Source of the DNA: Haliotis cracherodii
Taxonomy: Eukaryota
Direction: 5' to 3'
DNA: 64,000 nucleotides
Assembly: GCF_022045235.1 (NCBI RefSeq)
Contig: NW_027266271.1
Span: 24,180,001-24,244,000, forward strand
Shown here: piece by piece, positions 5,701-50,300 of the stretch
Numbering within the stretch: position 1 is the first letter of the stretch
Layout: each line of letters opens with the position of its first letter
Made by a program: the position numbers and the translations under genes
The notes under the pieces: model-generated
Told to the model about the DNA's origin: nothing
What the model saw: the letters and a program-made list of their open reading frames with translations, nothing else
Database searches by the model: none

Positions 5701-8700
5701 TCATTGACACCTGGAGACATGAAACAGAGCGACACGCCCTTAAAGAGGCAATACATTAAGAATATCAATATCGGGTGTGACCACCATTTGCGTTGATACA
5801 GACGAGGAGGTGCATTGAATACACCAGATGAGTGAAAACAGCATGGGAGACTTTGTTCCAAATTTCAGTCAATAATTCTGACCAACTGAGCTAGCGTTAT
5901 CGGCTGGTTCTGGTCCTGTCGTAGGTGTCTCACTATCTCATCCAAAACACGTTTATGGTCGAGAGGTCTGGAGAAACATCCGGCCATGGAAGTACAACAA
6001 TTTATGTGCCAGGTTCTCCTTACCGCATGTAGTCCCATGCACGACCATCCAAGTTTTCCTGGAAACTTATCTGTGGAATAGTTTACTGTCACAGTCTTTT
6101 GAACCTCAGCTGTTCCAAGTTAGGCGTGCCGGACGGTGACAGGGAAGCAAAATTGGGCGTATCGATGGACGTCGGGGTCGGATGTTGAGCTCCCTCAACC
6201 GGTTGCGTACGGTTCTGCCATAAATTGATCTCAACCGAGATGTGGCAGTTTGGTATCAATTCCATAATGCACCAACAAAATATGGTTGTCTTGTTGACGT
6301 GACGTCACACGTAGATGAATGACACCTTGGCGAGTGTTGACCGCCTATAGATAACGCCACCAAAGAGATGATATTGTGTTGCGATGAACATTAAGATGTC
6401 TGGCAACTTCGTTTTGCGCCATTCCTGTATGGCCCAGCAGTTTAAGGCGCCGCGATTCGCTGTGCAGAGTTGCGCCGCGATATAACTGTAATACTGTTAA
6501 AAGCGGCGTCAAACCCAACTCACTCACTCACTCATACGTTGAGTTTCAGCAAGCCATGGTATTGCATAAAGGTTATCAATTTTAAAGAGAAGTATCTTGA
6601 TGAGGATCTGATAGTTAAACAAACTTTACATGATATTCACGTTAAAAATACACGTGTAGCAGTATCATGCAAACAAACACACAAACATCCAAATTGTGCG
6701 CCGTACATTAATATGCACTTGCAAACTGTGTATCACGACCTTCAAGTCGAGGAGATATCTTAATGAATATGTATTGAAAGATTTTGAATAAATTAATTCT
6801 TTTGAACTTTATATGAAGCACAGTTACTTTTTCTGTTAGTATAGTATACCACTGAGAGACACAAATAATAAATGCAAAAAAAATGGAATATGATTATTTA
6901 TGACTGATTATGTCTACGTTGTATCAGTAATCCCTGTCTCCCGTCTTAGATTTTTGCTTTCGTTGCAGGTAGTCCTGTCGCCTGTGTATACTCTATATTT
7001 ACTCAACTTAATGAGTGTTCACGACAAGCCGTGCAAGAATTTGGTGGAAGTGAAACAGATACGTGTTTGTAAGTTGACAGTTGACAGTTGACTGTCAGGT
7101 GTTGCATTAACTATACATTATTAAGCACATAATGCTTCGAACATTGCATGTAATGGACCATATGACCACACTCCTTAGGCGTGTATTCCCGTTCAGACTG
7201 ACCTGAACTGATCTAATCCCTAACACAGTCACTCCCATATAGTTGAAACACTCAAATCATTTACAGCTAACAAATAAACAAGTGTGCGTGTGCGTGCGTG
7301 TGTGTGTAAGTTTGTGCATGTGTGCGTGTGCGCGCGCGTGTGTGTGTGTCTGTGTGTGTGAACATCATCAATTGTTTTCGGGGATTCATTCATATTTTTA
7401 TAACCGCTATTTTGTTTTTTTAAGCCCAATTCAATCTGTTTTGACGGATAATCAAGACTGATTACTTTCTGATTGTAACGTTTGATATTTCGCTACGTTA
7501 CTAGCAATACTAGCAATAAAAAGGCCCGCAGTACCTTACCTTACGCCTTACTAAATTCGGAAAGGTGGTCATCTATGACTTGTCTTATTGCTTCATCGCA
7601 ACCCGGAGTTGTAGATCTTTGGTCATGCTTTCACTCCTTTGTTAGCTTGGTCCGGGCTCAGTATTACTTGCAGGCCCTCGCGACATAGCTGTGACACTGA
7701 CTGCGGAGTTAACTAAATTCACTTACTCAATCGCTGTATTTCACAAAAACGTTATCTTTATATTTTCAAGTATACTTCAAGTGTAAGTATAGAGTAGGCT
7801 CTGATAGGTTTCGATGCATATGTAATGTATCTATCAAAGGTAAACAATAAAAGGTTCACTCCCTACTCCCCTGTTGGTCTTCCAATACTGCAAGGGGCAT
7901 AAGTAGCCCAGTGGTTTAAGGAGCGGCTCAATGTGCCACGCTGCGTCTCTCATCCGTGACAGCCAGATCCGCGGATCAAGGGTTCGAATCCCAGAATCTC
8001 CTGATCAAGAGCTGTGTTCTGTATCCGATTGTCTCAAAACTATATCCGCGATCATGGGTTTTACCAAAGTGCTAAACGTCTAAGATCTGCATCACTTTGT
8101 GCTTTCCTCACACATTAATGTAATATGCCATAAAATACTGTCCAAAGCTGCGTTGAAAAGTAACTCACTCAATTCACTTATTCCTAGGATGCAGGCTAAG
8201 ACTGATGTTTGTTCATATCCACTGCTGCGGTTATGTGGCGATGCTGCAGTACGCATCTACGAAGATCAAACGAGGAATGATACCGGCTGCAAAAATGAAC
8301 CAGGTATGTTGTTCTTTGTTAATATATATACATTGTTAATCTCATGGTATAAGGTAAGACATAGGTAAGACATAATGAGTTACATCTGTTTCACTGAGAA
8401 TGTCATGAAAAGCGTTTGAATTTGCCCTCAAAATATTTATTTAATATGCTTATCAGTAAGCTACGGCTCAGAATAGTTACCTTAAAATGCGTGGACGTAA
8501 CATGTGTGCGCGTCATACGTAACTCCAGAGCAAGACATCATTCGTTGAAAGCATATAATCAAACGGGGCTGTGGAACCAGCATTTCTCTTTGCGAAAGGA
8601 AGGTGAGGTTACAATTGTCATATTGTTTCTACTGATTGCACATTGTATCATTAGTATTTTACTTATGTGTTCCTTACATAATGTACCTGTTGGTTCCGAA

Positions 8701-11700
8701 CTTAGGTCCTGTATTAAAATACGGAATATAAAGCAAATGTTGGAACCAAAACCAAATTCTTAATTCTTAACCTTGCAGCACTGACAAGGTTGCGGTAGAA
8801 CTGTCAGAACTGACAGATGGTAATCCTTGCGTGTGGGCTCTGTTTCCTTATCACTTATCGTGAAGTAAGAATTACCGGCAGCTTGATGTGTCGTAGTCTG
8901 AAACAACACCCCACAATTCACAAGATAGGCATATGTAATTAAGTACATACACACGAAAACAAAGATAAGTAAGGACTGTCGTTATCATCGAAATATCTCA
9001 TCGCTCCTGGAAGTTGTGCAAAGGTGTTGGACCACTTTGATTAGAGAGTTCAAGAAATGTTACACAGCCAGCGCGTACGATTTCAATATTTTGTGGTAAA
9101 GTCAAGATAATGTCCAGACATGCATGTTCTTTTCTTTGTGTGCGTCACAAATAATCTGCATCATTTATGAGTGTTTTCAAACAATTATGAGCTGTTTCAC
9201 AAATTAAATCAAAAGAAATCTGAAGTTTAGACACTTAGGCATCCCCTTCTCGGGATAGATGAAGCAAAATCGCGGCCTTTTGTCGGTATTTGTGAATGTT
9301 ACACTTGTAAGCATTTGAATAATTATTCCTTGCGATCTATGACCACAGATACAACAGTCGAACTCTCAAATGGACATACGCACCGCGTTGACTGTTCAAC
9401 GACTAAAGGGATACAGGACGGAGCTCTTGACTGCTTATTGTACCATGGTATTTACCTTGAAGTGCCTCAGTTGTCATCACCGGAAGAAACGACGGATTAC
9501 ATACTGAAACGTCTCACAGTGTCCCAATATAGAGACATGTGCAGGTAAAAGTCACATTGTCATGTTGAAAATACAAAATAATAATACTCAAAGAACACAG
9601 TGGGTTCGTTATGAACGACATTTTCTTAATCCGATTTTTATATATCTTTTATATAATAGGGTTTGAAAGCATTTAATGAAACTGGTATTGCATGCTTGCA
9701 CTACGGGGTGCCTTTAATGGTTTCTGGTTTCTTTCTTATGATAATTTTATAGTTTCTACCGACCGATTAGTGAAATGTGTGCGTGTGTGTGCTTGAGTGT
9801 GTGGGTGCGTGCGTGCGTGTGAGTGCGTGTGGGGGCATTCTGTTCACGTTTGCTCCTGTAACATTGTTTATTCGCCTTCTCAGCAACATTTCGGCCTTCC
9901 ATAACGCTGTCAGATGTACCCTTGCTGTCCTGACCCGGTGCAGTCCGTCCAAGCGACACCTGTTTGCTGACCCCCATTCTGCCACTCTCGGAATGACCTC
10001 CTTCTGCGAACACAAGGATTTTAATAGTAGGTGTAATACAAACGCTAAAACACAAATGTTCATTGTTTTAGCATGAAGATTTAGATATGCCTCGGTAGAT
10101 ATTCGAGACTGGTTATTCTCTGGCGTTGACCTTTTGAATTATGTTTTCTTTCAACTTTGGCTTTGGTTGCACACCAGCAATATATGACATTTCTGAGACA
10201 TGTTTTTCCTGAAAATGCAAAGCTTTTCTCCTTTCTCTTGTGTTGCTGATTGTCTTTTTCAGAATTAGTATTTTAAACACATGTATCATTGACATGAGAA
10301 AATGATAATACTGCACATTCTTTTGCAAATCGTGTCAGTGGCGGCTGCTACCGGTAAAGCAGGGCAAAGCAACCATATTGAAAAATCTATTCACGGCCAT
10401 TACTCGGTCCTTTTTGTACTAAATGTAATTAAATGTTGTAATTGTCTAGTCTGTGGCGACCTGCAATAGTTCATATGTTGACCTTGTTTTTACCATGCTC
10501 TTAAAATCTCTCAAAATGCACATCTGGTTCCGTAAACTCCGTCTCTTCTAAAATCGCCAGGCAGGTAGCTTATCTTTGACATACACTTTTTTCCATAGGA
10601 TTCTGTTTAAAACAATATTTATGCAGAGTTTAGAATTTAAGCAGAAAATGTATAAATATTAATTTTTAGTGGCTGTCCTTGTTGGCATCATAAATTACAT
10701 ATCCAGGTGAGCTACAGTGCAGTGGCACTTTTCATTTGGTAGCTCAATTATCAGTTGTTCAGATTTTAGTTTGTATATTTCTTTAAGAAAGACATCAATC
10801 AAGGAAAAAAAACTTTAAATTGATTGTACAATAATTACAATGATTTGGACCTCGAGTTAAGAGTTTATCGTATGTTGTTTTTCTAGAGTTTGCCTCCAGT
10901 TGTGTGATGAACGCCGACCAGAGCACCTGTGAGAAAAGGATGTTTAATTCCAGCACGCCCGAGCAAATATGCAGGTAGATAGATAAAATGTTGATTGAGG
11001 ATATGTCTGACCATTGCATTATTAAAACATGTGCTGCTTTGTAGCTGTTTGATTGGCATTCTAGAAGTTGGTGTGTAAGAAAGTAAACGAACAACTCTAT
11101 GTATAACATTTTTAAGTTGTACGTTTTCTTACTGCGTTGTAGTTATGTGAATATGGGTAATAATTTACTGTTAGTGCTTCGATAAAACAGACCCGTGGTT
11201 ATTCCATTGCAAGATTGGTCCTCTAGTGTCCTAAAGGATGGCCAGACTCTATGACTTGAATATGAGTGTGTAACAGTGCTCCGTGTCCCGTTCCTAATGC
11301 TTTCAAACCCGGGATTCGAACACACAACGACCGGTTTCTGGCAGCTATAGTGTGTCGTCGTAAAGCACCGAGCTGCTGTAATACCTGTTCTTGGATCTAT
11401 CCCCTGACAAGTGATATACCAAAAGTTGTCAAGAATCAGGCAGAACTCGGGGTATTTGTACATGTATATTGATTTACAACTGATTTCGGAGTAACATAAA
11501 TATGTATATTTCTGATGTACGTACAATCTCCTTTAACCTCACGACAGTGACAAGCCAGTGATTGACATCATGAGAATCGATTTACGCAGGATAGGATACG
11601 ATGGCATGCGACAACCAAGGCAGCGAGCCTAACAACCAGATCCCGATAGTCCTACGAAAAGCCCAAATTCTAACCATGAACTTCACGGGGACCCGAGATT

Positions 11701-11986
11701 GGAATAAGGTGTTGAAAGTTTATGAACCTAATTTACTTTTTTTGTACCCCCCAACAGTATCATCCAAACCTTCACCGACTGCATGAAAGCCTCTGTGGAA
11801 TCCTGTGGTCCAAGCACTGCTGAACTGTACACGCACCTGCTGTCATCCCAGGTCCCCGCCCCCTGTGCGCAGGGGGGAAGGACGACCACACCCATCCCCA
11901 AGAGCCGGGCTGGCAAACGTGTGGCTTCAATGTTAATGACAGTACTCGCATTTATATATTCGAGAGTTGGAGTATCTCAGGGGTAA
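2789..11986 (+). CDS. Gene A: 24-Cys, four-module extracellular glycoprotein with C-terminal hydrophobic (GPI-signal-like) tail; 5' signal exon not located
   Basis: Eight GT-AG exons splice into one open frame of ~408 aa: 2789-2999 (IVTVTPEIEALTTNLLCSNQTAVLAAQQQC...VLVC), 5434-5576 (NTEAYSKVVRCLQYIIYSC...NATCSFLS), 6969-7068 (SPVACVYSIFTQLNEC...TDTC), 8188-8303 (MQAKTDVCSYPLLRLCGDAA...TGCKNEP), 9349-9544 (TTVELSNGHTHRVDCSTT...LDC...RDMC), 9884-10026 (NISAFHNAVRCTLAVLTRC...SFCEHKDFN), 10887-10974 (FASSCVMNADQSTC...EQIC), 11758-11986 (IIQTFTDCMKASVESC...APCAQGGRTTTPIPKSRAGKRVASMLMTVLAFIYSRVGVSQG*). Phases 1,2,1,2,1,2,1,2. Three Cys per exon. Sequons NQT, NRS, NAT, NDT, NIS, NSS. Same architecture as B, B' and C. 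Confidence 0.85.
3021..3262 (-). mobile_element. SINE-like repeat, (caaa)n-tail family
   Basis: Reverse complement aligns with 58078-58341. Sits ~20 nt after the exon 2 donor of A. Confidence 0.75.
3500..4320 (-). mobile_element. Degenerate LINE 3' fragment
   Basis: Minus strand gives PILLYGAEIW (~4262-4291) and other decayed post-RT segments. Ends in aataaagattgattgattga. Confidence 0.55.
4451..5158 (+). mobile_element. Internally deleted Tc1/mariner DNA transposon inserted into a SINE
   Basis: Imperfect inverted ends (aaaaaaagaaacgcacag ... ctgtgcgtttcttttttc). Decayed DDE motifs QQDNAP and WPS-x3-LNPIEHL*DELDRRVRQR. The SINE sequence resumes on the other side at a TA. Confidence 0.75.
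5690..6845 (-). mobile_element. Degenerate Tc1-like transposon
   Basis: N-terminal HTH GMAQNEVARHLNVHRNTISSLW (~6360-6425), LDEIVRHLRQ...PITLAQL, and terminal GGHTRY* (~5766-5786). Interrupted by a SINE piece at ~6431-6535. Confidence 0.7.
7282..7359. repeat. Compound (GT)n/(GTGC)n microsatellite; similar tracts at ~9775-9831, 25373-25414, 41014-41066, 46824-46878, 60172-60200, 63158-63184
   Basis: Direct inspection. Confidence 0.9.
7894..8170 (+). mobile_element. Old tRNA-headed SINE carrying the duplication breakpoint
   Basis: A box gtagcccagtggtttaagg, B box ggttcgaatccc, body aaacgtctaagatctgcatcactt...ctttcctcacacatt, and aactcactc tail ending just before the exon 5 acceptor of A. Confidence 0.7.
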
Positions 11987-12672
11987 AACCCGAACAACCT
12001 GAATGTGGACTTTCTTTTGTACTATTTTCTTTTAGTTTCTTAAAATACGTTACAAACTCCACACATACAAATTTCACAACGGGTCAAGGGGCTTTCATGG
12101 CATTTTCGAGCTGTGACGTAATAATATATTTTGATCGAACTTACACATTGAGTTGCTTTTGCATGTGTTTGTGACAGGTGCCACCGGTTGGGCAGGATAT
12201 GCTCACCTTTTCGCGAACACCTGGTATCATTACTATTTAATTGTGATTCATCAACACATGCTCATGATATGATCGGAATTGTATAATCGACTCTGCTTTA
12301 AGCAGAAAGTTCTATTGGATTTGGAAAGGGTTCTGTCGCCCTTATTTACAAACCTCATATTAATATTTGTTTGTGTTATCAGCTAGCACAGAACCCGATC
12401 AGAGACTGAATTCTTGTTCTGTGGTTATCTTAAGTCAAACTACAGCCAATAATTATTTATAATATATAACTCTCGGGTATTTTTATTGATTTTTATCCTC
12501 AGAAGGTCATGTTTGAAAAATATTACACTTCTAAACATGGGTTAGCATTGCAAAATACCTGGACAAACCAGGAAAACACAGGAATAACAAACCTTAAATC
12601 AACTTTGATGTAAATATTTGAACATATTTAATCTCCCTTTAAGCTACGTGAAGCTGTAACTGACAATCTTCA

Positions 12673-12736
12673 TCAGCCAATTACGACTGATCCAGCGGTC
12701 AGACACATAGACGGCGATTGGCTACGCAGGAGGTCT
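12673..12736 (-). pseudogene. Displaced 3' half of the original B-type last exon
   Basis: Translates DLLRSQSPSMCLTAGSVVIG*, matching the B' C-terminus (28269-28333). Lies ~100 bp downstream of the current B stop codon. Confidence 0.8.
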
Positions 12737-12837
12737 TGCGCATGTAATTTATATATTTATATATGCATATATGTATGGTTGAATCATTGGTTAACTGCAG
12801 TACAATCGCGTATTTATACTGTCATGTAGGATTTTTG

Positions 12838-15800
12838 TCAGCCAATCAGCGCCGACGTTGATCCAATCTTTGTCTTCAGACACATAGACGGGGATTGGCT
12901 GAGCAGGACATCTTTGTACATGCTGACAGTCGTCTTGCTGCAGCCGCTCACTGCAGACACCAGACACTTCTGGGTGGCATTAGTGTCACTGAAAACAAGC
13001 AAAAACACTTCCAGAGTTACCATGTACAATTCTGAGTAGCTTGGTGATTAAGAAAACGTTAATACCAGGTAATAACCAGTCTGGATTACGGACATATTCC
13101 ATAAAGCGCAAAAGGCAAAAAGTGAAACTTATTTGAAATCATCATACTGAGTCAGAGATGACACAATGTGTTCGCGTAAAGGGAACACAAGGTGTTCCCG
13201 TAAAGGGAACACATGTCCTGTGTTACCGGTAGTACACGTTTTACAGAAGCTGGTCCATCTCCTTCGTTTGAAGATTGAATAAAGGTTCATACACCTACAC
13301 ATCAGGGTAACAACATTCAAGGCATAAGTAAAGCTTTTAAAAAGTGTATGCTAACGCTTTCGTTCGAAAATTCAATAAATCTTCATACGACTCATGCATA
13401 TAAGTTGTTCCATCAGGGTTGCAACATTAAAGACCTTAGTAAAGCTATTAAAATGTGTTTGATAGACTTGTGGAAGACATTTCCGAAACAATTCAGCTCA
13501 ACCATTGACTTTCCATTGCACGTGTTTGTGACGGGTGTCATTGGTGGAACAGATACGATCACATCGGGAACAACTGTCATCATCACTAGTTATTCATAAC
13601 CATATCACAATGGACATTACTTTTAAAAGAGAATTCGTATGGTTATCCATAGGGTCGCTTTTATTTGTTTTGCTACAATATATACTATGGGTGTCAGAAA
13701 CTTAATGAACATCTGGTGGTTCTAGTGTGTCACCTGGGTGATTGTGCTTCATCATGCACTCCAGGCGTGGATCTTTATTCATGCTATCAACCACTGGTCT
13801 GACTGACCACCACTATTTATAGGTCCCCGGTTAATGCATCTAGATGGAATATTACTGAGTTAGCTTGATTAAAGTTGCGTTCAGTCATACTGTGATATCC
13901 TTTTGGACTACCAGTGACACTTTAGGACAAGTCCATTGTTTGTGGGTTGTAAACAGGGTAGAGCCTGTTATATTGTTTGCAGCTTAACACGTGCATGTAA
14001 CTACTTTACCTATTATCCACGTGCATACACCATTGATCTAACATAGAAATATTTAATAAAGTAGTGAGCATTCTTCAGACCGTCACGGTGTCTTTGAACC
14101 GAAAGATCTTTGATGTAATTTACTTACGCGCACAGGTGTCCTGGGCTAGTTGAATCCAAAGCGTGGAGTCCATGGCCACTGCCGCATGCTGCTTTAGGTG
14201 CATTCTGTACACACTGAGAGTCGAAATCTAAGAACAGACAATTATAAGAAAGATTCACTATGTCATTCTTAAATAAAAAACATACAACTTTGAATTAAAT
14301 AAAAATGAATGCCTTTTCTAAAATATACATAGTTCTTCATTTTTAAATTTAAACGTCGCCGTTTTAAAAATTCCACCTTCAAGACGTCTAAATATCGAAG
14401 ACATGTATGACTTTATATCCCGGATTTAAATTAATATATACAAGTTTGAAATAAAATAAATATACAGTATCCATGCGCTGTATACTTTCAAAATGACTTT
14501 CAAATCTCACCGGGTTTTAAAAAAAATGAAAATGCCAACCTCTACACAAGTATAATAATGGAACTTGAATGTTGCGTCTCGAGTCTCAACAAAGACATAC
14601 ACGTATAAATAAAGGATGGACATTTTGCCGTATATCTCACCCCCAATGTGGCCGCAGAGTTTAGCCAAGCCGTTCTGCACTGTCTGGGAGTCGGCCACCG
14701 CGGACTTCATCACGTGGTCACTGCACTGCTCCTGTACCCACAGAGTACAATTCACTGCCAGCTGGTAGTTCTTCAGATTACTGTATGATATAGAACGTAA
14801 CTTATGGAGCTCGCTGTATGTTTATGTATATTCTGTGTATGTAACACGTACTATTTAGTCATTTATAATTCATGCTGGGATAGTTGCTTCTGAAATAAGT
14901 TCACGTTCCCTTTAATGTGCCCTTTTTGAAAATCATTTCATATCGGTCAACTGTGCCTGGTGTAAAAATGTTCAATAGTATCGTCTCATAAAAACGTAGC
15001 CTGCTTGTTTGGTCATACATTTTCTAAAATGTCTAAAATGCTTGCATCAGTTCTACATAAGAAAATTCGGAAGATAGTAAATGGAAGCAAAATGATTTTA
15101 AAAGTTCTCAAAATAAGTATTTCCGAAGCATGAATTAGATGTACATTCGAATAATACAATTCTTAAAGTTTTGTAATTACATACAATTGACAAATAATGT
15201 TACTGGTTGATAAAAGATTAAGATATTTATTTTTCTATATAGGTAAATTTAAAAGGAACCCTGAAAATGGAGAAATATATTTTGGAGACTATAAGGTCTA
15301 TGCCGCGCTATTTTCATCTTCCCGAGGCAAGAGGGTTAACTGGCTTTAAAAGTGGAAACTGGACTTTTATAGTCAGTTAACTCTCTTGCCTCGGGAGGAT
15401 GCGCTATTTTCTGTGCGCATATGAAATTCCGCTTCTTTACGGATGGATAACCATGCCCTAAATTCTTGGTACACTTTCAGGCAACAATTGAAGCAACATC
15501 AAGAAAATGTTTATGGATAATGTCGAAGACGGCGACAGATAACAGACGCCAGAGAGCAGATTGCACATAAGTAAACAGAACTTTACTTTTCTCACGTCTA
15601 CTGTCTAAATTTGTAAAACTGTTAATATTGATCAATCCCTTACCCGCGATGTCTGATTTTCCGTGATCCATTCATATAATTTCAACTGCTATCTGGGGCG
15701 GTCGGGTAGCTCAGTGGTTAAAGCGTTCGCTCGTCACGCCGAAGGCCCGGGTTCGATTCCAGACATGGGTACAATGTGTGAAGCCCATTTCTGGTGTCCC

Positions 15801-18800
15801 CCGCCGTGATATTGCTGGAATATTGCTAAAAGCGGCGTAAAACCATACTCACTCACTCACTCAACTGCTATCTTGCCTTTTTTGTCCAATGGATACTCGA
15901 GACTGGTTATTCTTTGGCTTTGATGTTTTATATTAATATTCAAACAGACACTTGTAACTACAGGAGTTCGAGGTGGTAGTAAGCGATATCTTAAAAATAC
16001 ATATACCTGCACATCGTCTTGCTTTCACTCATTGCCATAGCGTTCATAATGTAATGGCTTGTGCCTTCACTTGTTAGTTGCTTTGGGACATCTAGCAATA
16101 CACTGTTGTACATTAAGCATTGATAGTAGCTGCCTCGGATGTTTTCAGTGGTGGAACAGTCCACGCTGGTGATGTCTGGGCCTGACGGAAGTCAATGAAT
16201 TAATATCAAGTCTCAGGAATATGCCATGGTACATGGTACATGTATTTATAAATGATTCCCAAACGTACTCGATGAAACGACCAGAAAATGTGTATGCACA
16301 TTGCAAATACCAGTGATCTGACTTACTTAATTTGTTTATTTCAGAATATATTGCTTGTTTGTTTGTTTGTTTATTGTTGTTTAACGCCGCACTCAGAATA
16401 TTCCAGCTTTACGATGGCGGTCTGTAACAAATCGATTCTCGAACAGATAATCCACCGACTGACATCATGATCATCGATCTAAAAGCTCTTGCAACAATAA
16501 ATGAATAAGAATGTTTTACAGTCAAACAACACCAAAATGATATGACAGTTAGGTTTTGAGAAATGTTGAATATATAATGGTCCGTCGCCAGCATCCCTAT
16601 GAGTATGACAGGTACAGTTTAACGTTCGGGCTGTAGATCGTATATACTAGTAACTATATTTAATTATTTACACCTTTACTCAACTCACAACAGAGTTAAT
16701 ATAATGTTCATTAATAGCCTTTTCACACAACTACATTTCCTTAATCCATCTGCTGTTTTACTGTTCATATATGTGTGATGATGTCTGTCAGTCCTGTTGT
16801 GACGAACCTGTAGCAATTGACGAGCAGTCTGTGTTGTTTGGCACGTTTGCTTCATAGATATGGAGTGCGGCCTCGCCACAGGCTGGTATGTACTTTCGGG
16901 CACATAGCGACGACATCTGTGCTGACCTGACATAGATAATTCAAATGAAATCAACCAATTAAGATTTTGATTAGATTGTGAGGGGTTATAGCTCTGTTTC
17001 ATGTATAAGACACATCAAATTAATTTTCAACGGATTTGTTATTAATGTAATGTATTTCATGTAAAGACTAAATGAGGTTGATATCTTCTAGTTGCTAATG
17101 ATGGAATGTCAAAGATTCGATGTTTTATAGTTTTTGGAAAAAGTAAATATCGGAAGAACCTGTTCATGGATATCAATCAGCCTTTCTATGATACCATGTA
17201 CGACTATTGGGGAAAAAAGGAAAGCAAGAATCTAATAATCTTTTAATCAGGCCTGATGTGAATTACACAATTCCTGCCTGTGAACTTCCATAAAAAACTA
17301 AGAATGGTGGTCATGAGACAAATACACGCACTCACACACACGGTTTGTATCATTTTAAAGAAGGATACAAGTATTTGACGACAAGTTACTCACAAACAAT
17401 CTATCTTGTGCATCAACTCAGTAAAGTTGAGGTGAAGGTAATCGTTGGTGGTCATGTAACTGTTGACATCGGGACAGTCCCCCATTTTAGACGTCACTTC
17501 GACCATGCAGGTCATGTTGAGCTCTTGAGGAACAATGACGTACTTAATAGTTAAACAACTTGATAGCCGGTGATTATAAAAACAGTACTGTTTTATTAAT
17601 GAACTGGTGTAAGTTCTTACGGATGCTTATGCTAAAGTTAAAAATGATAGCAAGTTTCTTAACATCTAAGGTGGAAACCAAATTGACTTCAATAAAATGA
17701 ATTAGTGCACCGAGAAACCTCATTTCTCGAAGTACTATATATAGCTGGTTGTAGTTTCGAGTGATTTGATTTCACAGATTTCACAGAGCCAGAGCCAAAA
17801 GGACTTGTACATCCCCTTGAACAATTTATTCAGTTTATGAAGGCCGAGTTATCGAGGTTTATCAATAAACAATATATTTCAGCCAAGTATGTCGAACATT
17901 TTTCTTTCGAACACATCTTACGTGGTTCAAAAATTAAAAAACTAATCCTGAATTCAATCCAACTGTACATCTAATACATCCTGCACAAAACGTTTTGAAG
18001 ACTTGACATTTCGAACTAAAAACGCATCTGTGGCTTTCAATGTCCCTTTAATGGCTAGAAATATGTTGGAGAGATACAACAGTAACTTTCGACACGAGTT
18101 ACTCAGCTTACAACAGAATTTTGTATGGTAACCAGCAAGGAAAGAGGACGGCTTTGGAAAGCTTGAATGTTATATGTGGCCTTGAATGTTGTAGCCTTGA
18201 TCAAACAATTTTGCACAAGGGTCGCAGAACGTTCCTTGAAGGAAAGAGTATGCTCGATTGTACAACTAAAGTTGTGAAATGTAGACACCAAAGGCTGGAG
18301 CTGCTGGAATATTGCTCAACAAAAGGTGACTATTGAAAGGTTGAAGTCATCCCTCATATCATAAAAGGGAATTGACTCTTTAAACTTGAGTAACATTCTC
18401 AGTCAAACATATATTTCCCTAAAAATTCCAGAATATTACACATTTCAGGAACCACAAACAGTTTCATTTTCCAAGTTGTTATTGGACTTTAATTTTGTTG
18501 TCCTTACATATATATATATATACATAAGGAAAATAATATATATATTCTTTTCCTTATGTGTATCACATAAAAATGCCTTTCAGAGACATAGAGTTACCCC
18601 TTGGTTGTTTACAAACATGACAGTCTTGAGCATTCGAGAAGTTTCAGGATTGGACAGTTTCTAAAAGGGTGGTTGTACCTATATAAGAGCGACAAGAGTG
18701 CGATTCGATGTCTTTTACAACTTGTCTTGCATTTCATCTACCTATCAAGTACAGACGGGATACCTATCTGAAATTACCGAATTCCAAAACCATTTTGAAT

Positions 18801-21144
18801 TCTAAAATAGAGGCAGCATTGTTTAACGACATTCGACTGAAATTTTCTGGACATTCGTGAGTCCTCGGAAATATATTGTGAGGCTTGATACTTACTGCTA
18901 TTGCCATTTGTTTGACTATTGTACTGCCTGTTTTGATTGTAAACATAAAACTGTATTTTTGAATAAAATACATTAATCATGTTTGGTCATTTACTTATTT
19001 CACAATTTTAACTTGTACAAATCCATTTCTAGGATTAGCTTTGCGTTTCAAGTTTGAAATTCGTAACACTGATACATGTCACATTATCAGAGGTGATTTA
19101 AGACCAATTGAATTTGTTTGAGCAGATAATCAAGACTGTTTATTCTCTGGCGTTTACTATTGTCTATTACTGACATAACGGATAGGATCCGGTGACAATT
19201 GTGTCCAATTCCTTTGTCAGTGGTTAAAAATTATGCTATACTCACTGTCCTTGTTGGCGCAGGCATATTCTTGCCACTTCTTTATCTTGTCTGACGTCGT
19301 ATACGTATCGGTCTGTTTTAAACACTTCTTGTTTATGTTACCAACACAATCAGCGGCCTTCCCATAACCGTCAAGATTCCTGAACGTTTCGTCAAATGAC
19401 AATGTTTTTACATGGACAACGTGAACGAGAATCATTTCGTATGTTTTGCAACAATGTTATAAAAAGGTTGAATGTATCATATATTCTGTTTCATATAATC
19501 AAGAGATACGCAATTGCAGAAACATAGCCCCAACACAACCATACTGTTGTTCGAGCAGGGTTAATGTCAAATACTACTCTGTTTCTTTGTTTGTTGATTA
19601 GCACCACACTTAGCATTATAGCAACCGCTAAACAGAGCCCTCAGGTCATCCCATTAATTGTCAAGTACTTCCTACGGGCTATAGTCAATTCTCTTCTGTT
19701 AAAGTCACTTTCAAATGTTTATTATCCTTTAAAGCGAGACGAAGACGATCCTTTATGGTATCAGTCGTACAGCCCTTTACTGTCGTTCGGAATACCTCGT
19801 ATTAACCATTTCGAGTTTGCATGATCAGAAAACACTTTCCAACTGTCACTTTCCCGATCTGGTTAACTGATTGATGGGATGAAAGGTCGTTCTGACATGA
19901 ACCTATTGGGATGTCTGATTTTATTGAGATTTGCAATATTCCAGCTTTAGGGTGGCAGTCTTCAAATAATCGAGTCTAAACCATCAAGCCGATTTACAGC
20001 ATGAGCAATTGGGATTCGATGACATGCATCAAAAACGCCAGTCACCAGATTGCCCGATCAATATTCGACTTCATACATTGATAATAAGGCATCCTTGACT
20101 GCGGCGTAAAACATCAGTCACTGCACTAAAATCATAATGGTAGTATTTCAATTATCATTATCATTTGATCTTGTTTTTCTTTATTCCAATGCCACAAGCA
20201 TCATTAATAGTAGCATGAAGTATGAATGTTGATGTTATTAAAGTGTTATTAAAGGAATTGTTCATACTAACCTACACATGTCATCTAAATAACCTGGGGT
20301 TATCGAAGACAATACTGCAGCTCCGGACGAGTTGGTGATTTCGCTTAAGGATGGTATTTTGAAGGTGACGCCGTATTCGTCAAAACACTTCTGTTCAATT
20401 AACAACATAGATTGTAGATCGCTGCAGTTTACTTGCTGGGAGAAATCGATCACATCTGAGGTTCCATTCTTCCCTGGAAAATTATTCAATGAGTTCTTCT
20501 AATTTGTTCTCGCTTATTGCTAAATCAACATCCTCGCATTGAAAATTTAGCTTTCACAGGAAGAAACAGATATATTAGTGCTCAAGAGATTTGCAAATTT
20601 GTATCACGTTTTGCGATGGTACAGGGTGTGCTGGGTTACGCAAGAAATTGGTAGGGTTCGAGTTTCAGTCGCCATAACACCAAAGATGTTTTCAGTATAA
20701 CACGAATAAGATGAGTGGGTGAATACGTTTGGTTTTACGCTACTTTTAGCAATATTCCAGCAATATCATGGCGAGGGACACCAGAAATGGGCTTCACATA
20801 TTGTACCCATGTGATGAATCAGACCCGGATCTTCGGCTAATCCACCGCCCCAAATAAAACGAGAAATATATGTTACAATTACACTCATAAATCATAGTGT
20901 TCGTGTTTGCATGATCCATTATTTCAGCAGAATCAAAATCCTATAGGCTCTCCAAGCACCCCCAGGACCCAGTATCTAGCGAATAGTAACAACAGATTAA
21001 TGATACTTGATGACACCACGTCGTCCCGGTTTATGGAGTGAATAGCCCATTTAACCATTCTACTATTCAAAAGGCAGAGACGTAAATAAACTTACCGGAA
21101 ACCATCGAAAACAGCAGGAACACGAATAGGAACAAGAGCCTCAT
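12838..21144 (-). CDS. Gene B: secreted 24-Cys four-module glycoprotein (399 aa), chimeric last exon
   Basis: Nine exons totalling 1200 nt, open frame: 21144-21096 (MRLLFLFVFLLFSMVS, signal peptide), 20473-20272, 19379-19246, 17523-17394 (LNMTCMVEVTSKMGDC...KIDC), 16926-16808 (SAQMSSLCARKYIPACGEAA...TDCSSIAT), 16181-16007, 14780-14641, 14227-14128 (FDSQCVQNAPKAAC...GHLC), 12988-12838 (DTNATQKCLVSAVSGC...SMCLKTKIGSTSALIG*). All introns GT-AG. Three Cys in each of exons 2-9. ATG context accATG. Confidence 0.9.
15695..15860 (+). mobile_element. Young tRNA-derived SINE with 13-bp target-site duplication, in intron 6 of B
   Basis: A box gtagctcagtggttaaagc, B box ggttcgattcc, (cact)n tail. TSD tcaactgctatct at 15682-15694 and 15861-15873. 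Empty site at ~31210-31222. Other copies at ~20711-20850(-), 37146-37313(-), 53530-53645(-). Confidence 0.9.
18100..18490 (-). mobile_element. Penelope-like RT C-terminal fragment (paralogue at ~34680-35068)
   Basis: RDDFNLSIV...SNIPAAPAFGVYISQL motif. Confidence 0.65.
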
Positions 21145-21149
21145 GGTTG

Positions 21150-28268: not shown

Positions 28269-31200
28269 TCAGCCAATTACGACTGACCCAGCGGTCAGAC
28301 ACATAGACGGCGATTGGCTACGAAGGAAGTCTTCGTACATACTGACAGTCTTCTTGCTGCAGCCGCTCACTGCCGACACCAGACACTTCTGGGTGGAACT
28401 AGTGGCACTGGAAACAAGCAAAAACACTTCCAGAGTTACCATATCATTTCTGAGTAGAAATATCATATATAAAAAAGTGCAAGGAATCTGAAAACTCTTG
28501 ACACTTATTCAAAGCTTGGTGAATAAGAAAACGTTAATACCAGGTAATAACCAGTCTGGATTACGGACATATTCCATAAAGCGCAAAAGGCAAAAAGTGA
28601 AACTTTTTTGAAATTATCATACTGAGTCAGGGATGACAAAAGGTGTTCGCGTAAAGGAAACACATGTCCTGTTTTACCGTTAGTACACGTTTTACAGAAG
28701 CTGGTCCATCTCCTTCGTTTGAAGATTGAATAAAGATTCATACTCCTACACATCAGGGTGACAACATTCAAGGCCTAAGTAAAGATTTTAGAATGTTTAT
28801 GATAGACTTGTGGAAGACATTTCCAAAACAATTCAGCTCAACCATTGATAGAGAGATGACACAAGGTGTTCGCCTTGTTTTACCCTTAGTACACGTTTCA
28901 CAAAAGCTGGTCTAACGCTTTCGTTCGAAGATTCAATAAATCTTCATACGACTCATGCACATAAGTTGTTTCATCAGGGTTGCAACATTGAAGACCTTAG
29001 TAAAACTATTAAAATGTGTTTGATAGACTTGTGGAAGACATTTCCGAAACAATTCAGCTCAACCATTGACTTTCCATTGCACGTGTTTGAGACGGGTGTC
29101 ATTGGTGGAACAGATACGATCACATCGGGAACAACTGTCATCATCACTAGTTATTCATAACCATATCACAATGGACATTACTTTTAATAGAGAATTCGTA
29201 TGGTTATCCATAGGGTTTTGTCGCTTTTATTTGTTTTGCTACAATATATACTATGGGTGTCAGAAACTTAATGAACATCTGGTGGTTACAGTGTGTCACC
29301 TCATCTTTATTCATGCTATCAACCACTGGTCTGACTGACCACGGCTATTGATACGTCCCCGGTTAATGCATCTAGATGGAATATTACTGAGTTCAGTCTG
29401 ATTAAAGTTGCGCTCAGTCATACTGTGATATCCTTTTGGACTACCAGTGACACTTTAGGACAAGTCCATTGTTTGTGGGTTGTAAACAGGGTAGAGCCTG
29501 CTATATTGTTTGCAGCTTAACACGTGCATGTAACTACTTTACCCATTATCCACGTGAATACACCATTGATCTAACATAGAAATATTTAATAAAGTAGTGA
29601 GCATTCTTCAGACCGGTGTCTTTGAACCGAAAGATCTCTGATGAAGTTTACTTACGCGCACAGGTGTCCTGGGCTAGTTGAATCCAAAGCGTGGAGTCCA
29701 TGGCCACTGCCGCATGCTGCTTTAGGTGCATTCTGTACACACTGAGTGTCGAAATCTAAGAACAGACAATTATAAGAAAGATTCACTATATCATTCTTAA
29801 ATAAAAAACATACAACTTTGAATTAAATAAAAATGAATGCCTTTTCTAAAATATACATAGTTCTTCATTTTTAAATTTAGATATCGCCGTTTCAAAAATT
29901 ACACCTTCAACACTTCTAAATATCAAAGACATGTATGACTCTATGTCCCGGATTAAGATTCATATGTACAAGTTTGAAATAAAATAAATATACAGTATCC
30001 ATGCGCTGTATACTTTCAAAATGACTTTCAAATTTCACCGGGTTTAAAAAAAAATGAAAATACCAACCTCTACACAAGTATAATTATGGAACTTAAATGT
30101 TGTGTGCGTCTCGAGTCTCAAAAAAGACATACACGTATGAATAAAGGATGGACATTTTGCCGTATATCTCACCCTGCATGTGGCCGCAGAGGTTAGCCAA
30201 TCCGTCCTGCACTGTCTGGGAGTCGGCCACCATCGGCTTTGTCACGTGGTCACTGCACTGCTCCTGTACCCACAGAGTACAGTTCACTGCCAGCTGGTAG
30301 TTCTTCAGATTACTGTATGATATAGGACGTAACTTATGAAGCACGCTGTATGTTTATGTATATTCTGTGTATGTTACACACAGTTCACTGTCAGCTGGTA
30401 GTGCTTCAGATTACTGTATGATATAGAACGTAACTTATGAAGCACGCTGTATGTTTATGTATATTCTGTGTATGTAACATGTACTATTTAGTCATTCTAT
30501 AATTCATCCTGGGATAGTTGCTTCTGAAATAAGTTCATTGTCCCTTTAATGTGCCCAGTTCTACATAAGAAAATTCGGAAGATAGTAAATGGAAGCAAAG
30601 TGATTTTAAAAGTTCTCAAAATAAGTATTTCCGAAGCATGAATTAGATGTGCATTCCAATAATACAATTCTTAAAGTTTTGTAATTACATACAATTGACA
30701 AATAATGTTACTGGTTGATAAAAGATTAAGATATATGTTTTTCTATATACGTAAATTTAAAAGGAACCCTGAAAATGGAGAAATATATTTTGGAGACTTT
30801 AAGATCTATGCCGCGCTATTTTCATCTTCCCGAGGCAAGAGGGTTAACTGGCTTTAAAAGTGGAAACTGGACTTTTATAGTCAGTTAACTCTCTTGCCTC
30901 GGGAAGATGAAAATAGCGCGGCATAGATCTTGAATTTTCTGTACGCATAAGAAATTCCGCTTCTTTACGGATGGATAACCATGCCCTAAATTCTTGGTAC
31001 ACTTTCAGGCAACAATTGAAGCAACATCAAGAAAATGTTTATGGATAATGTCGAAGACGGCGACAGATAACAGACGCCAGAGAGCAGATTGCACATTAGT
31101 AAACAGAACTCTACTTTTTTCACGTCTACTGTCTAAATTTGTAAAACTGTTAATATTGATCAATCCCTTACCCGCGATGTCTGATTTTCCATGGTCCATT

Positions 31201-43581: not shown

Positions 43582-43624
43582 CTGGGTGGCACTAGTGGCA
43601 CTGAAAACAAGCAAAAACACTTCC
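43582..43624 (-). pseudogene. Remnant of a third B-type gene (acceptor plus first codons of last exon)
   Basis: ctgggtggcactagtggcactgaaaacaagcaaaaacacttcc matches B' ~28389-28431. It is followed directly by LINE ORF1 sequence, so the rest of the gene has been deleted. Confidence 0.7.
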
Positions 43625-46877: not shown

Positions 46878-47337
46878 GAGCACACAGGCAGGCACACTCA
46901 CTCACTGGAGTTTTTATTGTTATACTCAAAATTAGACAAACCTTTCACAGTCCTTGGGAACCCAGCTCCCTAATGCTTGACGTGAGAGGTAATTACATTG
47001 ATTGAATGCTAAGGTTCAGTCAGAAGGGTTGGTAGGGTGTCACCGTACCCCGACTGCATATGAAGTTACTCATGATATCAACCACATGTTTGTCTGGCCC
47101 TACCTTGATTATTTACTGACATATATATTTACTGTCATATGAGGAATAACATTGCTGATTGCAGCGTTGCACAACCACAAAATATTCACTGCAATTAGAC
47201 TGGGCAAATGCAAAAGAAAACGAAACAGCATATGTTTGCGCATGTAATTTATATATTCATATATGCATATAGGTATGGTTGAATCATTGGTTAACTGCAG
47301 TACAATCGCGTATTTAAACTGTCATGTAGGATTTTTG

Positions 47338-50300
47338 TTAGCCAATCAGCGCCGACGTTGATCCAATCTTTGTCTTCAGACACATAGACGGGGATTGGCT
47401 GAGCAGGACATCTTTGTACATGCTGACGGTCGTCTTGCTGCAGCCGCTCACTGCCGACACCAGACACTTCTGGGTGGCATTAGTGTCACTGAAAACAAGC
47501 AAACGCACTTCCAGAGTTACCATATACAATCCTGAGTAGAAATATCATATGAAAACATTTGCATAAAAAACTCTTAAAATAGTTCCCGTTTTACAGAAGC
47601 GTGTCTCTCTCCGTCGGTATATTCCTTGTAGCTTGTCGGTACGTTTAATTAACACCTGGCAGTTCCAATGTCTGACTGGAAATAGTGTCACCACGTCACC
47701 GTGGTATGGATCGTTCCTAATGCCTGACCACGTGGAGATTATTATTAAGTTGTCTAAATATTTTTGTAATATTTGTAACACATTATGAAGAGTACATCGT
47801 TATATTCTATGCTGCTTCACACGAGCATTGACTCCTTTACCTATTATCTACGTGAATACAACTTTGAGATGACAAAACATGATTTAGCAACTGCAGTGGG
47901 AATTCATCCGAATGGTGAAGTTTACTTACTCGCACAGATGTCTCAGGATAATTGAAGCCAAAGAGCGTCGTTTACTGCCGCACGCTGCTTTAGGTGCATT
48001 TTGAACACACTTGGTGTCGAAATCTAAGAACAGATCATCGTAAGGATGGTTCAGTGTATTATTCCGAAATTAAAGCAAGTTCCAATTAATTGCAGGTAAC
48101 CCCTCTCCTCAAATATACATGGCTTCTGTTTCTGTTTTGATGCTTAATTCATTTTAAAAATGTCAAATTTTACCGTCTAAATATCAACAGGTAAGCCATA
48201 TACGTTTCCTTTTCCGAAAAGATACACATATAAATAACAGATCGACATCATGTCGCATATCTCACCCCCAATGTGGCCGCAGAGTTTAGCCAAGCCGTCC
48301 TGCACTGTCTGGGAGTCGGCCACCGTGGGCTGCATCACGTGGTCACTGCACTGCTTCTGTACCCACAGAGTACAGTTCACAGCCAGCTGGTAGTTCTTCA
48401 GATTACTGTACGATATAGAACGTAAATCTATGTTTACTTTTTAGATCTATGCATAAAAATTCAGAGTGACAAAACACTCTCAGGAATACTGTATGACAAG
48501 AGGGATGACTTCAACTTTTCATCAGTCAACTTTCCATTCATGTCGAGCAATATTCCAGCAGCTTTCTACCTAGATTTCAAAGAGAGTTATACGACTCTTT
48601 CTCAGAAGTTGTTTGATCAAGGTTACAACATTCAAGGCCTCAGTAAAGCATTCAAACAGTTATATGGCAGACGTGATGAGGCCATTCCAAATTTGACGCA
48701 TCAGTGACAAAAATGATGTCCGATGCAATTCACTATTTTGACTTGTGCCATATGTTCCCGTGTTTTGGCAGATGAACATGTGACTTGCTTTTGCATTTGT
48801 TTGTGACGGGTGCCACCGGTGGGACAGGATACGCTCACTGTTTCGCAAACACCTGGTATCATCAATATTCCATAGTGATTCATAAACGCATGCTGATGAT
48901 ATATTAAGAATCGAGGAAGCGCTGCCTAGTCGAACCCATCGAGAACTTTTCGGAGAATGTGAAGACTCTCCAACACTGCATTACCCAGTTTGTCAGAAGG
49001 GCTGTATTCCTGGCAGTAAACCCGGGTACTCTCCCAATGTCAGTCAACAGATTGGAGGGTACCAAACCTAAGGCACGGAGAACAATGGAGAGTCGGACAA
49101 CTTGGTACTTGGGATGCAAGCGTGACATTTCGAAAGCGAGGTCTGCATATTTGCCATGTTATTTCTGAATCTTGTCAATCATATTAGTGCCAAAAAGGAC
49201 AGAAAATTCAATGATATAAATGATTTCATTGGATTTATCAAAAAGGACAAGATCAGGTTTGTTGGCCTGGGTATGTCTGAGGCTGTATACGGGCCTACTC
49301 CAAAGAATTTTGTATTTATCATTTTCCATGATGCCCTCTACATATTCAGGGTCTTACCATGGATGGATCTCTGTGTCAAAACAAAAGTATTGCAAAGACG
49401 GTAATAAAATGATCGGGCCATTCCATTATGTCGCTTAAGACACTGTGTTTTTTCCAAAGCTGGGCATCCACTGACAATGTGTTGGACAGTCTCATTAAAT
49501 TCATTGCACATTCTACATTTCATATCTAAATTTTGAGTCCAAATCACACAGTGGCGGTTTCAAGTGGGAAGTGACTGGTCCTGAGCAGCAAACAGAAAGG
49601 CTGCTGTTTCTGTTTCACTTTTCAGGCCAGTCGACCTCATCCAGGCGAAGGACTCTGCAGGGTTGCTGATCATAAACTGCACATAAACTCGATGCAGTGG
49701 TCGTTCAGATAGCCTTTCCTTGAAAACCTGATTTGATATGGCACTTCGCTTAATTGACACTCATTTCTGTACCGTCCGGCAGTACAGAACTATCAACAAA
49801 ATCAACACTGACATTGAGATTATGTCCCGCATCCTTAGCTCGTTTACGTAAACTGTTGAATGCCTTGTTTTCATCATGAGTCTTGACATGCTTCACGAGA
49901 GGATCATCATCAGACAAATATATGTGTGCAAAAGTGCACAAAACAATTCTATTATGAAGAGCCTCCACGTTGATCAAACCACGTCCTCAAATTGTGATTG
50001 GTAAATATAACCGATTGAGAGAAGAGCGAGGTTGGTGGGATCTATTGTCTGTAGTCCGGATCATCCAAACCCTCTTTGCTGCATTTTCGGCGACAGTGTT
50101 AGCAAGGAAGTATGTACCTGCACAGCTGTAAGCTGTTGAATCGGTGACAGGTTTAGCAAGGAAACCTGTTCCTGCACAGCTGTAAGCTGTTGAATCGGTG
50201 ACAGTGTTAGCAAGGAAACATGTTCCTGCAGAGCTGTAAGCTGTTGAATCGGTGACGGGGTTAGCAAGGAAGTATGTACCTGCACAGCTGTAAGCTGTTG

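What the first reader, a model, noticed from the sequence alone, without database searches (positions are those of the whole stretch)
12673..13040. Gene B captured the terminal exon of gene C, leaving its own C-terminus stranded downstream
Seen: 12737-12990 matches 47237-47490 of gene C (offset 34,500; 6 differences by hand count; identical peptide ...CLKTKIGSTSALIG), including ~100 bp of C's 3' flank. Immediately beyond it, at 12673-12736, is the 3' half of the B'-type exon (...CLTAGSVVIG*). Inference: a one-sided gene conversion or template switch from C into B, homologous at the acceptor end and non-homologous at the other. B is therefore a chimera with a swapped half-module and a new 3' UTR start.
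Basis: partly seen in the sequence, partly recalled or inferred. Interest (0 to 1): 0.75.

Follow-up and report, generated by a model that had tools for sequence, protein, structure and literature searches.

The report
Abalone gene borrowed its neighbour's last exon
One copy of a tandemly duplicated, abalone-only secreted-protein gene has had its last exon overwritten with a 303-base copy from a neighbouring relative, leaving its old ending in the untranslated tail of its messenger RNA; this is real but an ordinary kind of event.

Summary
It covers 51 nt of intron, the whole coding part of the last exon and 101 nt of gene C's 3' flank. Directly downstream, at 12673-12736, lies the stranded 3' half of B's original last exon.

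It is not a mis-assembly. A DNA contig from one run and a spliced, poly(A)-tailed RNA contig from another study cross the 12736/12737 junction.

The window's exons translate identically to RefSeq proteins labelled Haliotis cracherodii. B's protein body is 92.9% identical to B' and 52.6% to C, but its last exon is 100% C. All four H. rufescens B-type genes and B' keep the ...TAGSVVIG ending, and the C orthologue keeps ...KTKIGSTSALIG. So the transfer ran from C into B, on B's own branch.

One refinement: the intron-side end of the patch also sits on a discontinuity, a 57-bp loss relative to B'. Both junctions show only 2-nt microhomology. That favours a microhomology-bounded templated patch over classical conversion.

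The scan has logged gene conversion elsewhere in this genome. This is a new member of a known kind, of moderate to low interest.

The parts
12737..13039 (-). C-derived patch inside gene B (303 bp). It holds 51 nt of intron end with the acceptor (12989-13039), the coding part of the last exon (12841-12988), the stop TGA (12838-12840) and a 101-nt copy of C's 3' flank (12737-12837).
   Evidence: 96.7% identical to 47236-47539. In the 155 three-way columns, B=C at 14 sites, B=B' at 4 and B'=C at 2. The splice joint 12988->14128 is seen in RNA contigs.
12673..12736 (-). Stranded 3' half of B's original last exon (DLLRSQSPSMCLTAGSVVIG, then two stops). It is now untranslated and lies inside B's 3' UTR.
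   Evidence: Translation. Colinear with B' 28270-28333. Covered by RNA contig X10 record 11. The peptide is identical to the ending of H. rufescens B-type proteins P0015-P0017.
12480..12672 (-). B's native 3' UTR, running down to the mRNA 3' end at about 12480.
   Evidence: X10 record 11 ends at 12480 with a loose run of 20 T, which is a poly(A) tail on the minus strand. Depth is 0 in 12342-12448. AATAAA lies at 12482-12487.
47237..47539 (-). Donor: the last exon of gene C with 51 nt of its intron and 101 nt of its 3' flank. It is unchanged by the event.
   Evidence: Its translation is 100% identical to RefSeq proteins P0019 (H. cracherodii) and P0005 (H. rufescens C orthologue).
28272..28514 (-). 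B' counterpart that was never converted: a B-type last exon ending ...TAGSVVIG*, and the 57 bp of intron (about 28458-28514) that B lacks at the patch's upstream end.
   Evidence: Exon translation equals RefSeq P0014.
14128..14227 (-). Penultimate exon of gene B (B-type, not converted).
   Evidence: RNA joints 12988->14128 and 14227->14641 with CT..AC ends, which are GT..AG on the minus strand. B=B' at 29 informative sites and B=C at 0 in this region.
14641..14783 (-). Antepenultimate exon of gene B. The true 5' edge is probably 14780, after an AG.
   Evidence: X10 record 15. Translation. tblastn of P0004 covers 14642-14782 at 100%.
43582..43624 (-). 43-bp remnant of a B'-type last-exon acceptor in the truncated third repeat unit. 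It carries the B'-type diagnostic bases.

Best explanation
Gene B is one of two tandem copies (15.6-kb units) of an abalone-specific gene for a secreted protein with eight three-cysteine modules. At some point it suffered a break or a replication stall in its last intron or exon. The damage was repaired by copying 303 bp from the diverged paralogue C, which lies 34.5 kb away on the same strand. The copied stretch begins 51 nt inside C's last intron, runs through the whole coding part of C's last exon and its stop, and ends 101 nt into C's 3' flank. It replaced about 181 bp of B-type sequence, a net gain of 121 bp. Because copying overshot the end of the B/C homology, the new strand was rejoined to B in the middle of B's old exon, at a 2-nt microhomology (AA). 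That left the old exon's 3' half (…DLLRSQSPSMCLTAGSVVIG*) stranded. The intron-side junction also sits at a 2-nt microhomology (CT) and is accompanied by loss of 57 bp of B-type intron. I therefore think a single microhomology-bounded templated patch is the most likely mechanism, either a template switch or SDSA closed by end joining (about 55-60%). The alternative is classical conversion with one homologous end plus a separate deletion (about 30%). What is shown: B is a real, expressed chimera. Its mRNA splices into the C-type exon and stops at the C-type stop. Its 358-nt 3' UTR then runs through C's flank and through the stranded old coding end to B's own poly(A) site. The protein keeps all three cysteines of module 8. 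It gains an N-A-T sequon at N353 and a 4-residue-longer, lysine-richer tail. What is inferred: the repair pathway, and that the two junctions arose in one event.
For: Patch and junctions. Informative sites in the patch are B=C 14, B=B' 4, B'=C 2, against B=C 0, B=B' 29, B'=C 3 in the next exon's region. The 101-nt flank has no counterpart in B'. Direction and branch: B's body is 92.9% identical to B' and 52.6% to C, while its last exon is 100% identical to C of both species and 73% to B'. The other 5 B-type genes seen (B' and four H. rufescens loci, six sequences counting the two isoforms P0001 and P0018) end ...TAGSVVIG; B is the sixth gene and the only exception. Both C orthologues end ...KTKIGSTSALIG. 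In the body tree B and B' are sisters (82/89) inside a B-type clade, with the C-type clade at 100/100. C is continuous with B' beyond the patch's upstream end (ATATGATATTTCT is shared) while B is not, so B is the recipient. Reality and expression: X1 record 3 (12697-12945, 0 differences) and X1 record 4 (12987-13284) cross both junctions. X10 record 11 (12480-12988) carries a 20-T loose end. There are spliced joints 12988->14128 and 14227->14641 with CT..AC ends. X1, X6 and X10 all differ from the assembly at 12955, so they are not simply the assembled haplotype. RefSeq already models B with this ending (P0004). The event was not RNA-mediated, because the patch includes 51 nt of intron.
Against: The first diagnostic site inside the patch (13031) is B'-like rather than C-like. 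The conversion tract may therefore really begin between 13031 and 13029, inside an 8-10-bp stretch common to all three copies, with the 57-bp deletion being a separate event right beside it. Two-nucleotide microhomologies are weak evidence on their own. The donor and recipient are homologous over about 150 bp, so homology-driven invasion cannot be excluded. No long read spanning the whole 12.4-13.2 kb was seen, only contigs of 249-529 nt. X1 could be the assembly's own sample. The RNA nature of X10 is my inference from its splicing and poly(A), since its record is only a guess. The 3' end at 12480 abuts a genomic A-rich stretch, so the exact cleavage site is uncertain.
Confidence: 0.85

Rival explanations
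1. Classical one-sided ectopic gene conversion. The upstream end resolved inside homology near the acceptor, the downstream end was closed by end joining, and the 57-bp intron deletion next to it is an unrelated later event.
For: Site 13031 is B'-like and the next diagnostic site, 13029, is C-like. CTACTCAG is common to all three copies. About 150 bp at 89% identity is available for strand invasion.
Against: It needs an independent deletion to land within 10 bp of the tract end in an intron of about 1.1 kb, roughly a 1-2% coincidence (my estimate). 13031 can equally be a later change in C.
Confidence: 0.3
2. B's arrangement (C-type exon, flank, then remnant) is ancestral for B-type genes, and B' and the others lost the middle by deletion between the two direct repeats (AGCCAATC.CCGTCTATGTGTCTGA at 12699-12725 and 12876-12902).
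For: The two repeats exist in B and could mediate such a deletion.
Against: A repeat-mediated deletion would leave a C-type upstream half. B' and all four H. rufescens genes instead have a B-type upstream half (ATS.TQKC...YED.LR). Five genes would need the same loss. In the body tree B is sister to B'. The remnant in the third unit also carries B'-type bases.
Confidence: 0.02
3. The transfer ran from B to C.
For: Sequence identity alone does not give a direction.
Against: The H. rufescens C orthologue has the identical last exon, while none of that species' B-type genes has it. C is colinear with B' past the upstream end of the patch, whereas B is broken there. No stranded remnant lies downstream of C.
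Confidence: 0.02
4. Assembly artefact: a chimeric join of reads from B and C.
For: Tandem paralogues at 90-97% identity are prone to mis-joins, and the window has two N gaps elsewhere.
Against: Contigs from a DNA run and from an RNA run of another study cross the junctions. These runs differ from the assembly at 12955. The B-specific structure has B-type sequence on both sides.
Confidence: 0.01
5. Unequal crossing-over, or RNA-mediated (retro) insertion of C's last exon.
For: Both are common routes to chimeric genes (general knowledge).
Against: A crossover would change copy number and would not leave B-type DNA on both sides. The patch carries 51 nt of intron, and it ends 101 nt past the stop without a poly(A) tract.
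Confidence: 0.01

Closest known systems
Interlocus (ectopic, non-allelic) gene conversion between tandem paralogues
   Same: The transfer is non-reciprocal. A short tract (303 bp) came from a nearby paralogue in the same orientation, the donor is unchanged, and recipient-type DNA lies on both sides.
   Different: The tract runs 101 nt beyond the end of the homology and ends at a 2-nt microhomology, duplicating half an exon. The other end is tied to a 57-bp loss. Classical conversion resolves both ends inside homology and leaves no length change.
One-sided invasion, or HR initiated and end joining completed, in double-strand-break repair (SDSA closed by NHEJ/MMEJ). Known from gene-targeting and plant, Drosophila and yeast break-repair work; recalled, not read here.
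   Same: Copying from an ectopic homologous template overshoots into donor-specific sequence and is rejoined illegitimately. This yields donor flank plus a duplicated recipient segment.
   Different: This is a natural germ-line event seen in every black abalone sample laid here (three runs), not an induced break. The supposedly homologous end is itself discontinuous.
Microhomology-mediated template switching (FoSTeS/MMBIR) and templated-insertion repair. Recalled; only a search listing was seen.
   Same: A templated patch from a locus in cis, with 2-nt microhomology at both junctions and an associated small deletion.
   Different: The template is a true paralogue of the broken site, so homology may have guided the choice of template. 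There is one simple patch, not a complex rearrangement.
Abalone-restricted 'uncharacterized protein' family (RefSeq H. cracherodii XP_071101539.1, XP_071101544.1, XP_071101543.1; H. rufescens LOC124135832, LOC124135834, LOC124135835, LOC124135836, LOC124135887)
   Same: The window's genes B, B' and C are these proteins (100% exon identity).
   Different: The family has no Pfam domain, no PDB sequence match (best E 0.23) and no fold match. Its function is unknown.

Membership tests
Interlocus gene conversion | Non-reciprocal: the donor keeps its own sequence | tested here: met
   C's last exon is identical in protein to the H. rufescens C orthologue. There is no B-type sequence in C.
Interlocus gene conversion | A tract of donor type embedded in recipient-type sequence on both sides | tested here: met
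   B is B'-like at 9230-12737 (93.4%) and from 13038 upward.
Interlocus gene conversion | Both tract ends lie within donor-recipient homology, with no length change | tested here: not met
   The downstream end lies in C's flank, which has no homology to B'. The upstream end abuts a 57-bp loss. The net change is +121 bp.
Microhomology-bounded templated patch (template switch, or SDSA plus MMEJ) | Short microhomology at each junction | tested here: met
   There are 2-nt overlaps of the BLAST segments at 12736-12737 and at 13038-13039, read as AA and CT.
Microhomology-bounded templated patch (template switch, or SDSA plus MMEJ) | Both junctions arose in one event | tested here: inconclusive
   The coincidence within 10 bp argues for it, and the B'-like base at 13031 argues against. 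Orthologous DNA of other species is needed and could not be reached with these tools.
Retrocopy / RNA-mediated exon insertion | No intron sequence, and a poly(A) remnant at the 3' end | tested here: not met
   The patch includes 51 nt of intron. It ends at ...GCGCAA with no A tract.
Unequal crossing-over chimera | A single switch point with gain or loss of the interval | tested here: not met
   There are two switch points 303 bp apart, and the 34.5-kb interval is intact.
Any curated protein family (Pfam) | A match above the gathering score | tested here: not met
   0 families for the exon peptides and 0 for full-length P0001.

The most novel reading that the evidence does not exclude
A single microhomology-primed template switch between tandem paralogues replaced a whole terminal exon in the germ line of one abalone species. 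It created, in one step, a new protein ending (an extra N-glycosylation sequon and a longer lysine-rich tail) and a composite 3' UTR in an abundantly transcribed, lineage-restricted secreted protein. This would be a natural, datable example of replicative 'exon capture' acting as a route of modular protein evolution, possibly retained by selection.
Probability: 0.3. Interest if true: 0.5.

Novelty: new member of a known kind. Interest (0 to 1): 0.35.

Why it matters
This is a clean natural footprint of break repair that began on a paralogous template and ended illegitimately. Donor, recipient, an unconverted sister copy and outgroup genes are all available, and the RNA shows the consequence: the old coding end now sits in the 3' UTR. 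It shows how tandem families can swap whole exons rather than merely homogenise. It also gives a species-specific marker (+121 bp) in an endangered abalone. It does not reveal a new mechanism or a function for the family.

Tried and rejected
Pfam on ten stop-to-stop peptides of the region matched only the LINE endonuclease ORF, and Pfam on full-length P0001 gave nothing.

An AlphaFold2 model of B, built from a 17-sequence alignment, was only moderate (mean pLDDT 64, pTM 0.47, all-helical). Foldseek against the PDB gave no match at E <= 0.001. A profile search of PDB sequences gave one hit at E 0.23. The fold and function of the family therefore stay unknown, and I did not lean on the model beyond noting helices at 352-362 and 368-380 and a low-confidence tail.

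The representative search with the 49-aa exon peptide returned 3 proteins. Only P0001 is a relative. P0002 and P0003 are repeat-rich, unrelated hits; I fetched them and did not use them.

Paper searches found nothing on this family or this event. The searches were 'Haliotis cracherodii / genome / gene conversion' (listing only), 'abalone / gene conversion / tandem' (listing and abstract starts only) and six LOC numbers (0 papers). on repair mechanisms was seen as a listing only. No paper was read, supplements are closed, and the mechanism names in this report are recalled.

The relative species run X11 has depth 0 in 12770-12876 and 1.24 in 12877-12983, with depth on both sides. That fits absence of the patch in that species, but no contig piece was listed there and a hole proves nothing, so I do not count it as evidence.

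A cluster of B=C sites in the antepenultimate exon could be a second conversion tract or simply B'-specific changes (9 against 3 sites). It is not significant and I left it open.

I did not run GENECONV or RDP; the informative-site counts stand in for them.

Exons were translated and searched one by one, and full-length comparisons used the database's own named proteins.

Full report
WHAT IS THERE

The window is G000:C8:24180001-24244000 of a 1.18-Gb, 80-contig animal assembly. Self-BLAST shows a tandem array of units of about 15.6 kb:
- Unit 1, 7973-23536, carries gene B on the minus strand.
- Unit 2, 23534-39854, carries gene B'.
- Unit 3 is truncated (39852-43624, joined to a second copy of the unit end at 43625-44732).
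- Behind the array lies the more diverged paralogue, gene C, whose last exon is at about 47.4 kb.

B and B' are 93.4% identical over 9230-12737 against 24827-28333. At 12736/12737 that colinearity stops. From there to 13039, B matches C (47236-47539) at 96.7% over 304 bp, E 9e-144. The part of this stretch that B' also has (12876-13039) is only 89.6% identical to B', and B' is 89.1% identical to C there. No other copy of the stretch exists in the assembly.

ANATOMY ON THE CODING (MINUS) STRAND
- 13039-12989: the last 51 nt of the intron, with the acceptor.
- 12988-12841: codes DTNATQKCLVSAVSGCSKTTVSMYKDVLLSQSPSMCLKTKIGSTSALIG, identical to C.
- 12840-12838: the stop (TGA in B, TAA in C).
- 12837-12737: a copy of C's 3' flank with no counterpart in B'.
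- 12736-12673: resumes B-type sequence in mid-exon and reads DLLRSQSPSMCLTAGSVVIG followed by two stops. This is the 3' half of the exon that B' still uses (…MYEDFLRSQSPSMCLTAGSVVIG*).

All three coding differences between the patch and C are silent, since the peptides are identical.

IS IT REAL?

Four runs were laid on 11700-14900.
- X1 (a DNA run of the same organism label): record 3 lies on 12697-12945 with no difference, which puts 40 nt and 209 nt on either side of 12736/12737. Record 4 lies on 12987-13284 across 13039/13040.
- X10 (another study; recorded only as 'RNA?'): record 11 lies on 12480-12988 with one difference and carries a loose run of 20 T before 12480.
- X10 joints 12988->14128 and 14227->14641 have CT..AC ends, which are GT..AG on the minus strand.
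- X10 depth falls to 0 in the intron bins and below 12449.

So X10 behaves as spliced, polyadenylated RNA of the minus strand. X1, X6 and X10 all read C rather than A at 12955, so they are not copies of the assembled haplotype. At that site they are even more C-like, leaving 9 differences in 304. The mis-assembly reading is rejected.

B's mRNA therefore uses the C-type exon and stop. Its 358-nt 3' UTR (12837-12480) is made of three parts: C's flank, the stranded old coding end, and B's native UTR. The captured 101 nt of C flank holds no AATAAA or ATTAAA. C's first canonical signal lies 422 nt past its stop. That fits, by inference, with B still ending at its own site.

WHOSE GENE, AND WHICH DIRECTION?

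The 49-aa exon peptide found P0001. P0001 in turn found 11 proteins, all called 'uncharacterized protein' of Haliotis rufescens, H. cracherodii, H. asinina or H. rubra. Cluster look-up and tblastn show that the window's exons translate at 100% identity to three RefSeq proteins labelled H. cracherodii:
- P0004 = gene B
- P0014 = gene B'
- P0019 = gene C

Automated annotation therefore already models B with the C-type ending.

B's protein body (350 residues) is 92.9% identical to B', 85.5-91.4% to the H. rufescens B-type sequences, and 52.6% to C. Its last exon is 100% identical to C of both species and 71-76% to every B-type gene. B' and all four H. rufescens B-type loci end …TAGSVVIG, and both C orthologues end …KTKIGSTSALIG. 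In H. asinina and H. rubra the two classes also have distinct endings, …KQATGSPLIG against …KPKQ.LTSNLIG.

I built a maximum-likelihood tree of the bodies from 13 rows, leaving out the two N-terminally short proteins and one isoform. It puts B with B' (82/89) inside the B-type clade and separates the C-type clade at 100/100.

At the DNA level, C stays colinear with B' for at least 19 nt beyond the upstream end of the patch, whereas B does not.

Together these results fix the direction as C into B and place the event on B's own branch, after the B/B' duplication. Patch-to-donor divergence is 3.3%, against 6.6% between B and B'.

HOW IT HAPPENED

The downstream junction reads as follows:
- C flank: …ACATGCGCAA|ACATATG
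- B': …ATGTACGAA|GACTTCC
- B: …ACATGCGCAA|GACCTCC

This is a 2-nt overlap, seen as the 12736-12737 overlap of the two BLAST segments.

- B': …CACCAAGCT|TTGAATAAG…(57 nt)…ATATGATATTTCT|ACTCAG
- C: …ATATGATATTTCT|ACTCAG
- B: …CACCAAGCT|ACTCAG

So B lacks 57 bp that B' has and that C partly shares. The loss abuts the patch with a 2-nt overlap, CT.

About 181 bp of B-type sequence was thus replaced by about 302 bp of C-type sequence, a net +121 bp given by the difference of the two B/B' offsets. The patch contains intron and has no poly(A) remnant, so it was copied from DNA and not from spliced RNA. Two switch points with an intact 34.5-kb interval exclude a crossover.

I favour a single templated patch primed and closed at microhomologies (template switch, or SDSA finished by end joining). 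The paralogy between B and C probably guided the choice of template. The alternative is a conversion whose upstream end resolved in the 8-10 bp common to all copies, next to an unrelated 57-bp deletion. It stays alive because the first diagnostic site inside the patch (13031) is B'-like. DNA of other abalone species would settle this and could not be reached here.

THE PROTEIN

B has a signal peptide and 24 cysteines arranged as eight three-cysteine groups. The last exon encodes the eighth group (C358, C366, C386) and the tail. The swap keeps the C-x7-C-x19-C spacing. It adds an N-A-T sequon at N353 that B' lacks, changes YEDFLR to YKDVLL, and lengthens the tail by four residues.

The family has no Pfam domain, no PDB relative by sequence and none by fold. 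The AlphaFold2 model is all-helical but of modest confidence. What was swapped is a whole exon and module, not a half-module.

VERDICT

The kind of event, ectopic conversion or templated repair between tandem paralogues that yields a chimeric gene, is well known. Earlier notes of this scan report ordinary gene conversion at several other loci of the same genome. What is less common is the intact footprint: donor flank, stranded half exon, a discontinuity at both ends, transcript evidence and clear polarity from a sister species. I found no paper on the family or the event, but supplements and non-open literature were not searchable.

Noticed in passing
window 14643-14709: Inside B's antepenultimate exon, B agrees with C against B' at 9 sites, against 3 sites where B'=C and 1 where B=B'. 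This could be a second small C/B exchange or just changes specific to B'. It is not significant.
   Followed up: partly
window 12955: The assembly has A, but contigs of three runs (X1, X6, X10) have C, the base of gene C. It is a silent polymorphism inside the patch, and the assembled allele looks derived.
   Followed up: partly
window 12128-12341: Summed contig depth jumps to 36,000-132,000 in the DNA runs, with many loose ends and joints. This marks a very high-copy interspersed repeat between the two tail-to-tail genes. It also matches 45732-45858 and 48776-48902.
   Followed up: no
window 43582-43624: The truncated third repeat unit keeps only 43 bp of the B'-type last-exon acceptor, joined at 43624/43625 to a second copy of the LINE-bearing unit end (38732-39854).
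   Followed up: partly
window 11700-12186 (+ strand gene): The tail-to-tail neighbour gene's last exon (a three-cysteine module, …TDCMKASVESC…APC…) is covered by an X10 contig at depth 12.5, against about 1,900 for B's last exon. Contig depths are only a rough guide.
   Followed up: no
window 22986-23600 (+): ORF with an endonuclease/exonuclease/phosphatase domain (Pfam PF03372, E 1.6e-6). It is a LINE fragment at the boundary of the tandem units.
   Followed up: no
window 50087-51043 and 52412-53037: Long tandem arrays (period about 54 bp, and a more degenerate short-period array) inside the gene C region.
   Followed up: no
window 13160-13210 vs 28600-28700: B carries a 24-nt direct duplication in the last intron (…GTGTTCCCTTTACG… appears twice) that B' lacks.
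   Followed up: no
proteins P0004-P0019: The family appears restricted to Haliotis in a search of 5.8 billion proteins (11 hits, all abalone). It has several tandem loci per species (at least 5 named loci in H. rufescens, at least 6 on one H. rubra contig), 24-25 cysteines and no known domain or fold.
   Followed up: partly
window 12770-12983 in run X11: Contigs of a related organism (coded B) cover both flanks but give depth 0 and 1.24 over the patch at 95% likeness. This is compatible with that species lacking the patch, but it is not proof.
   Followed up: partly
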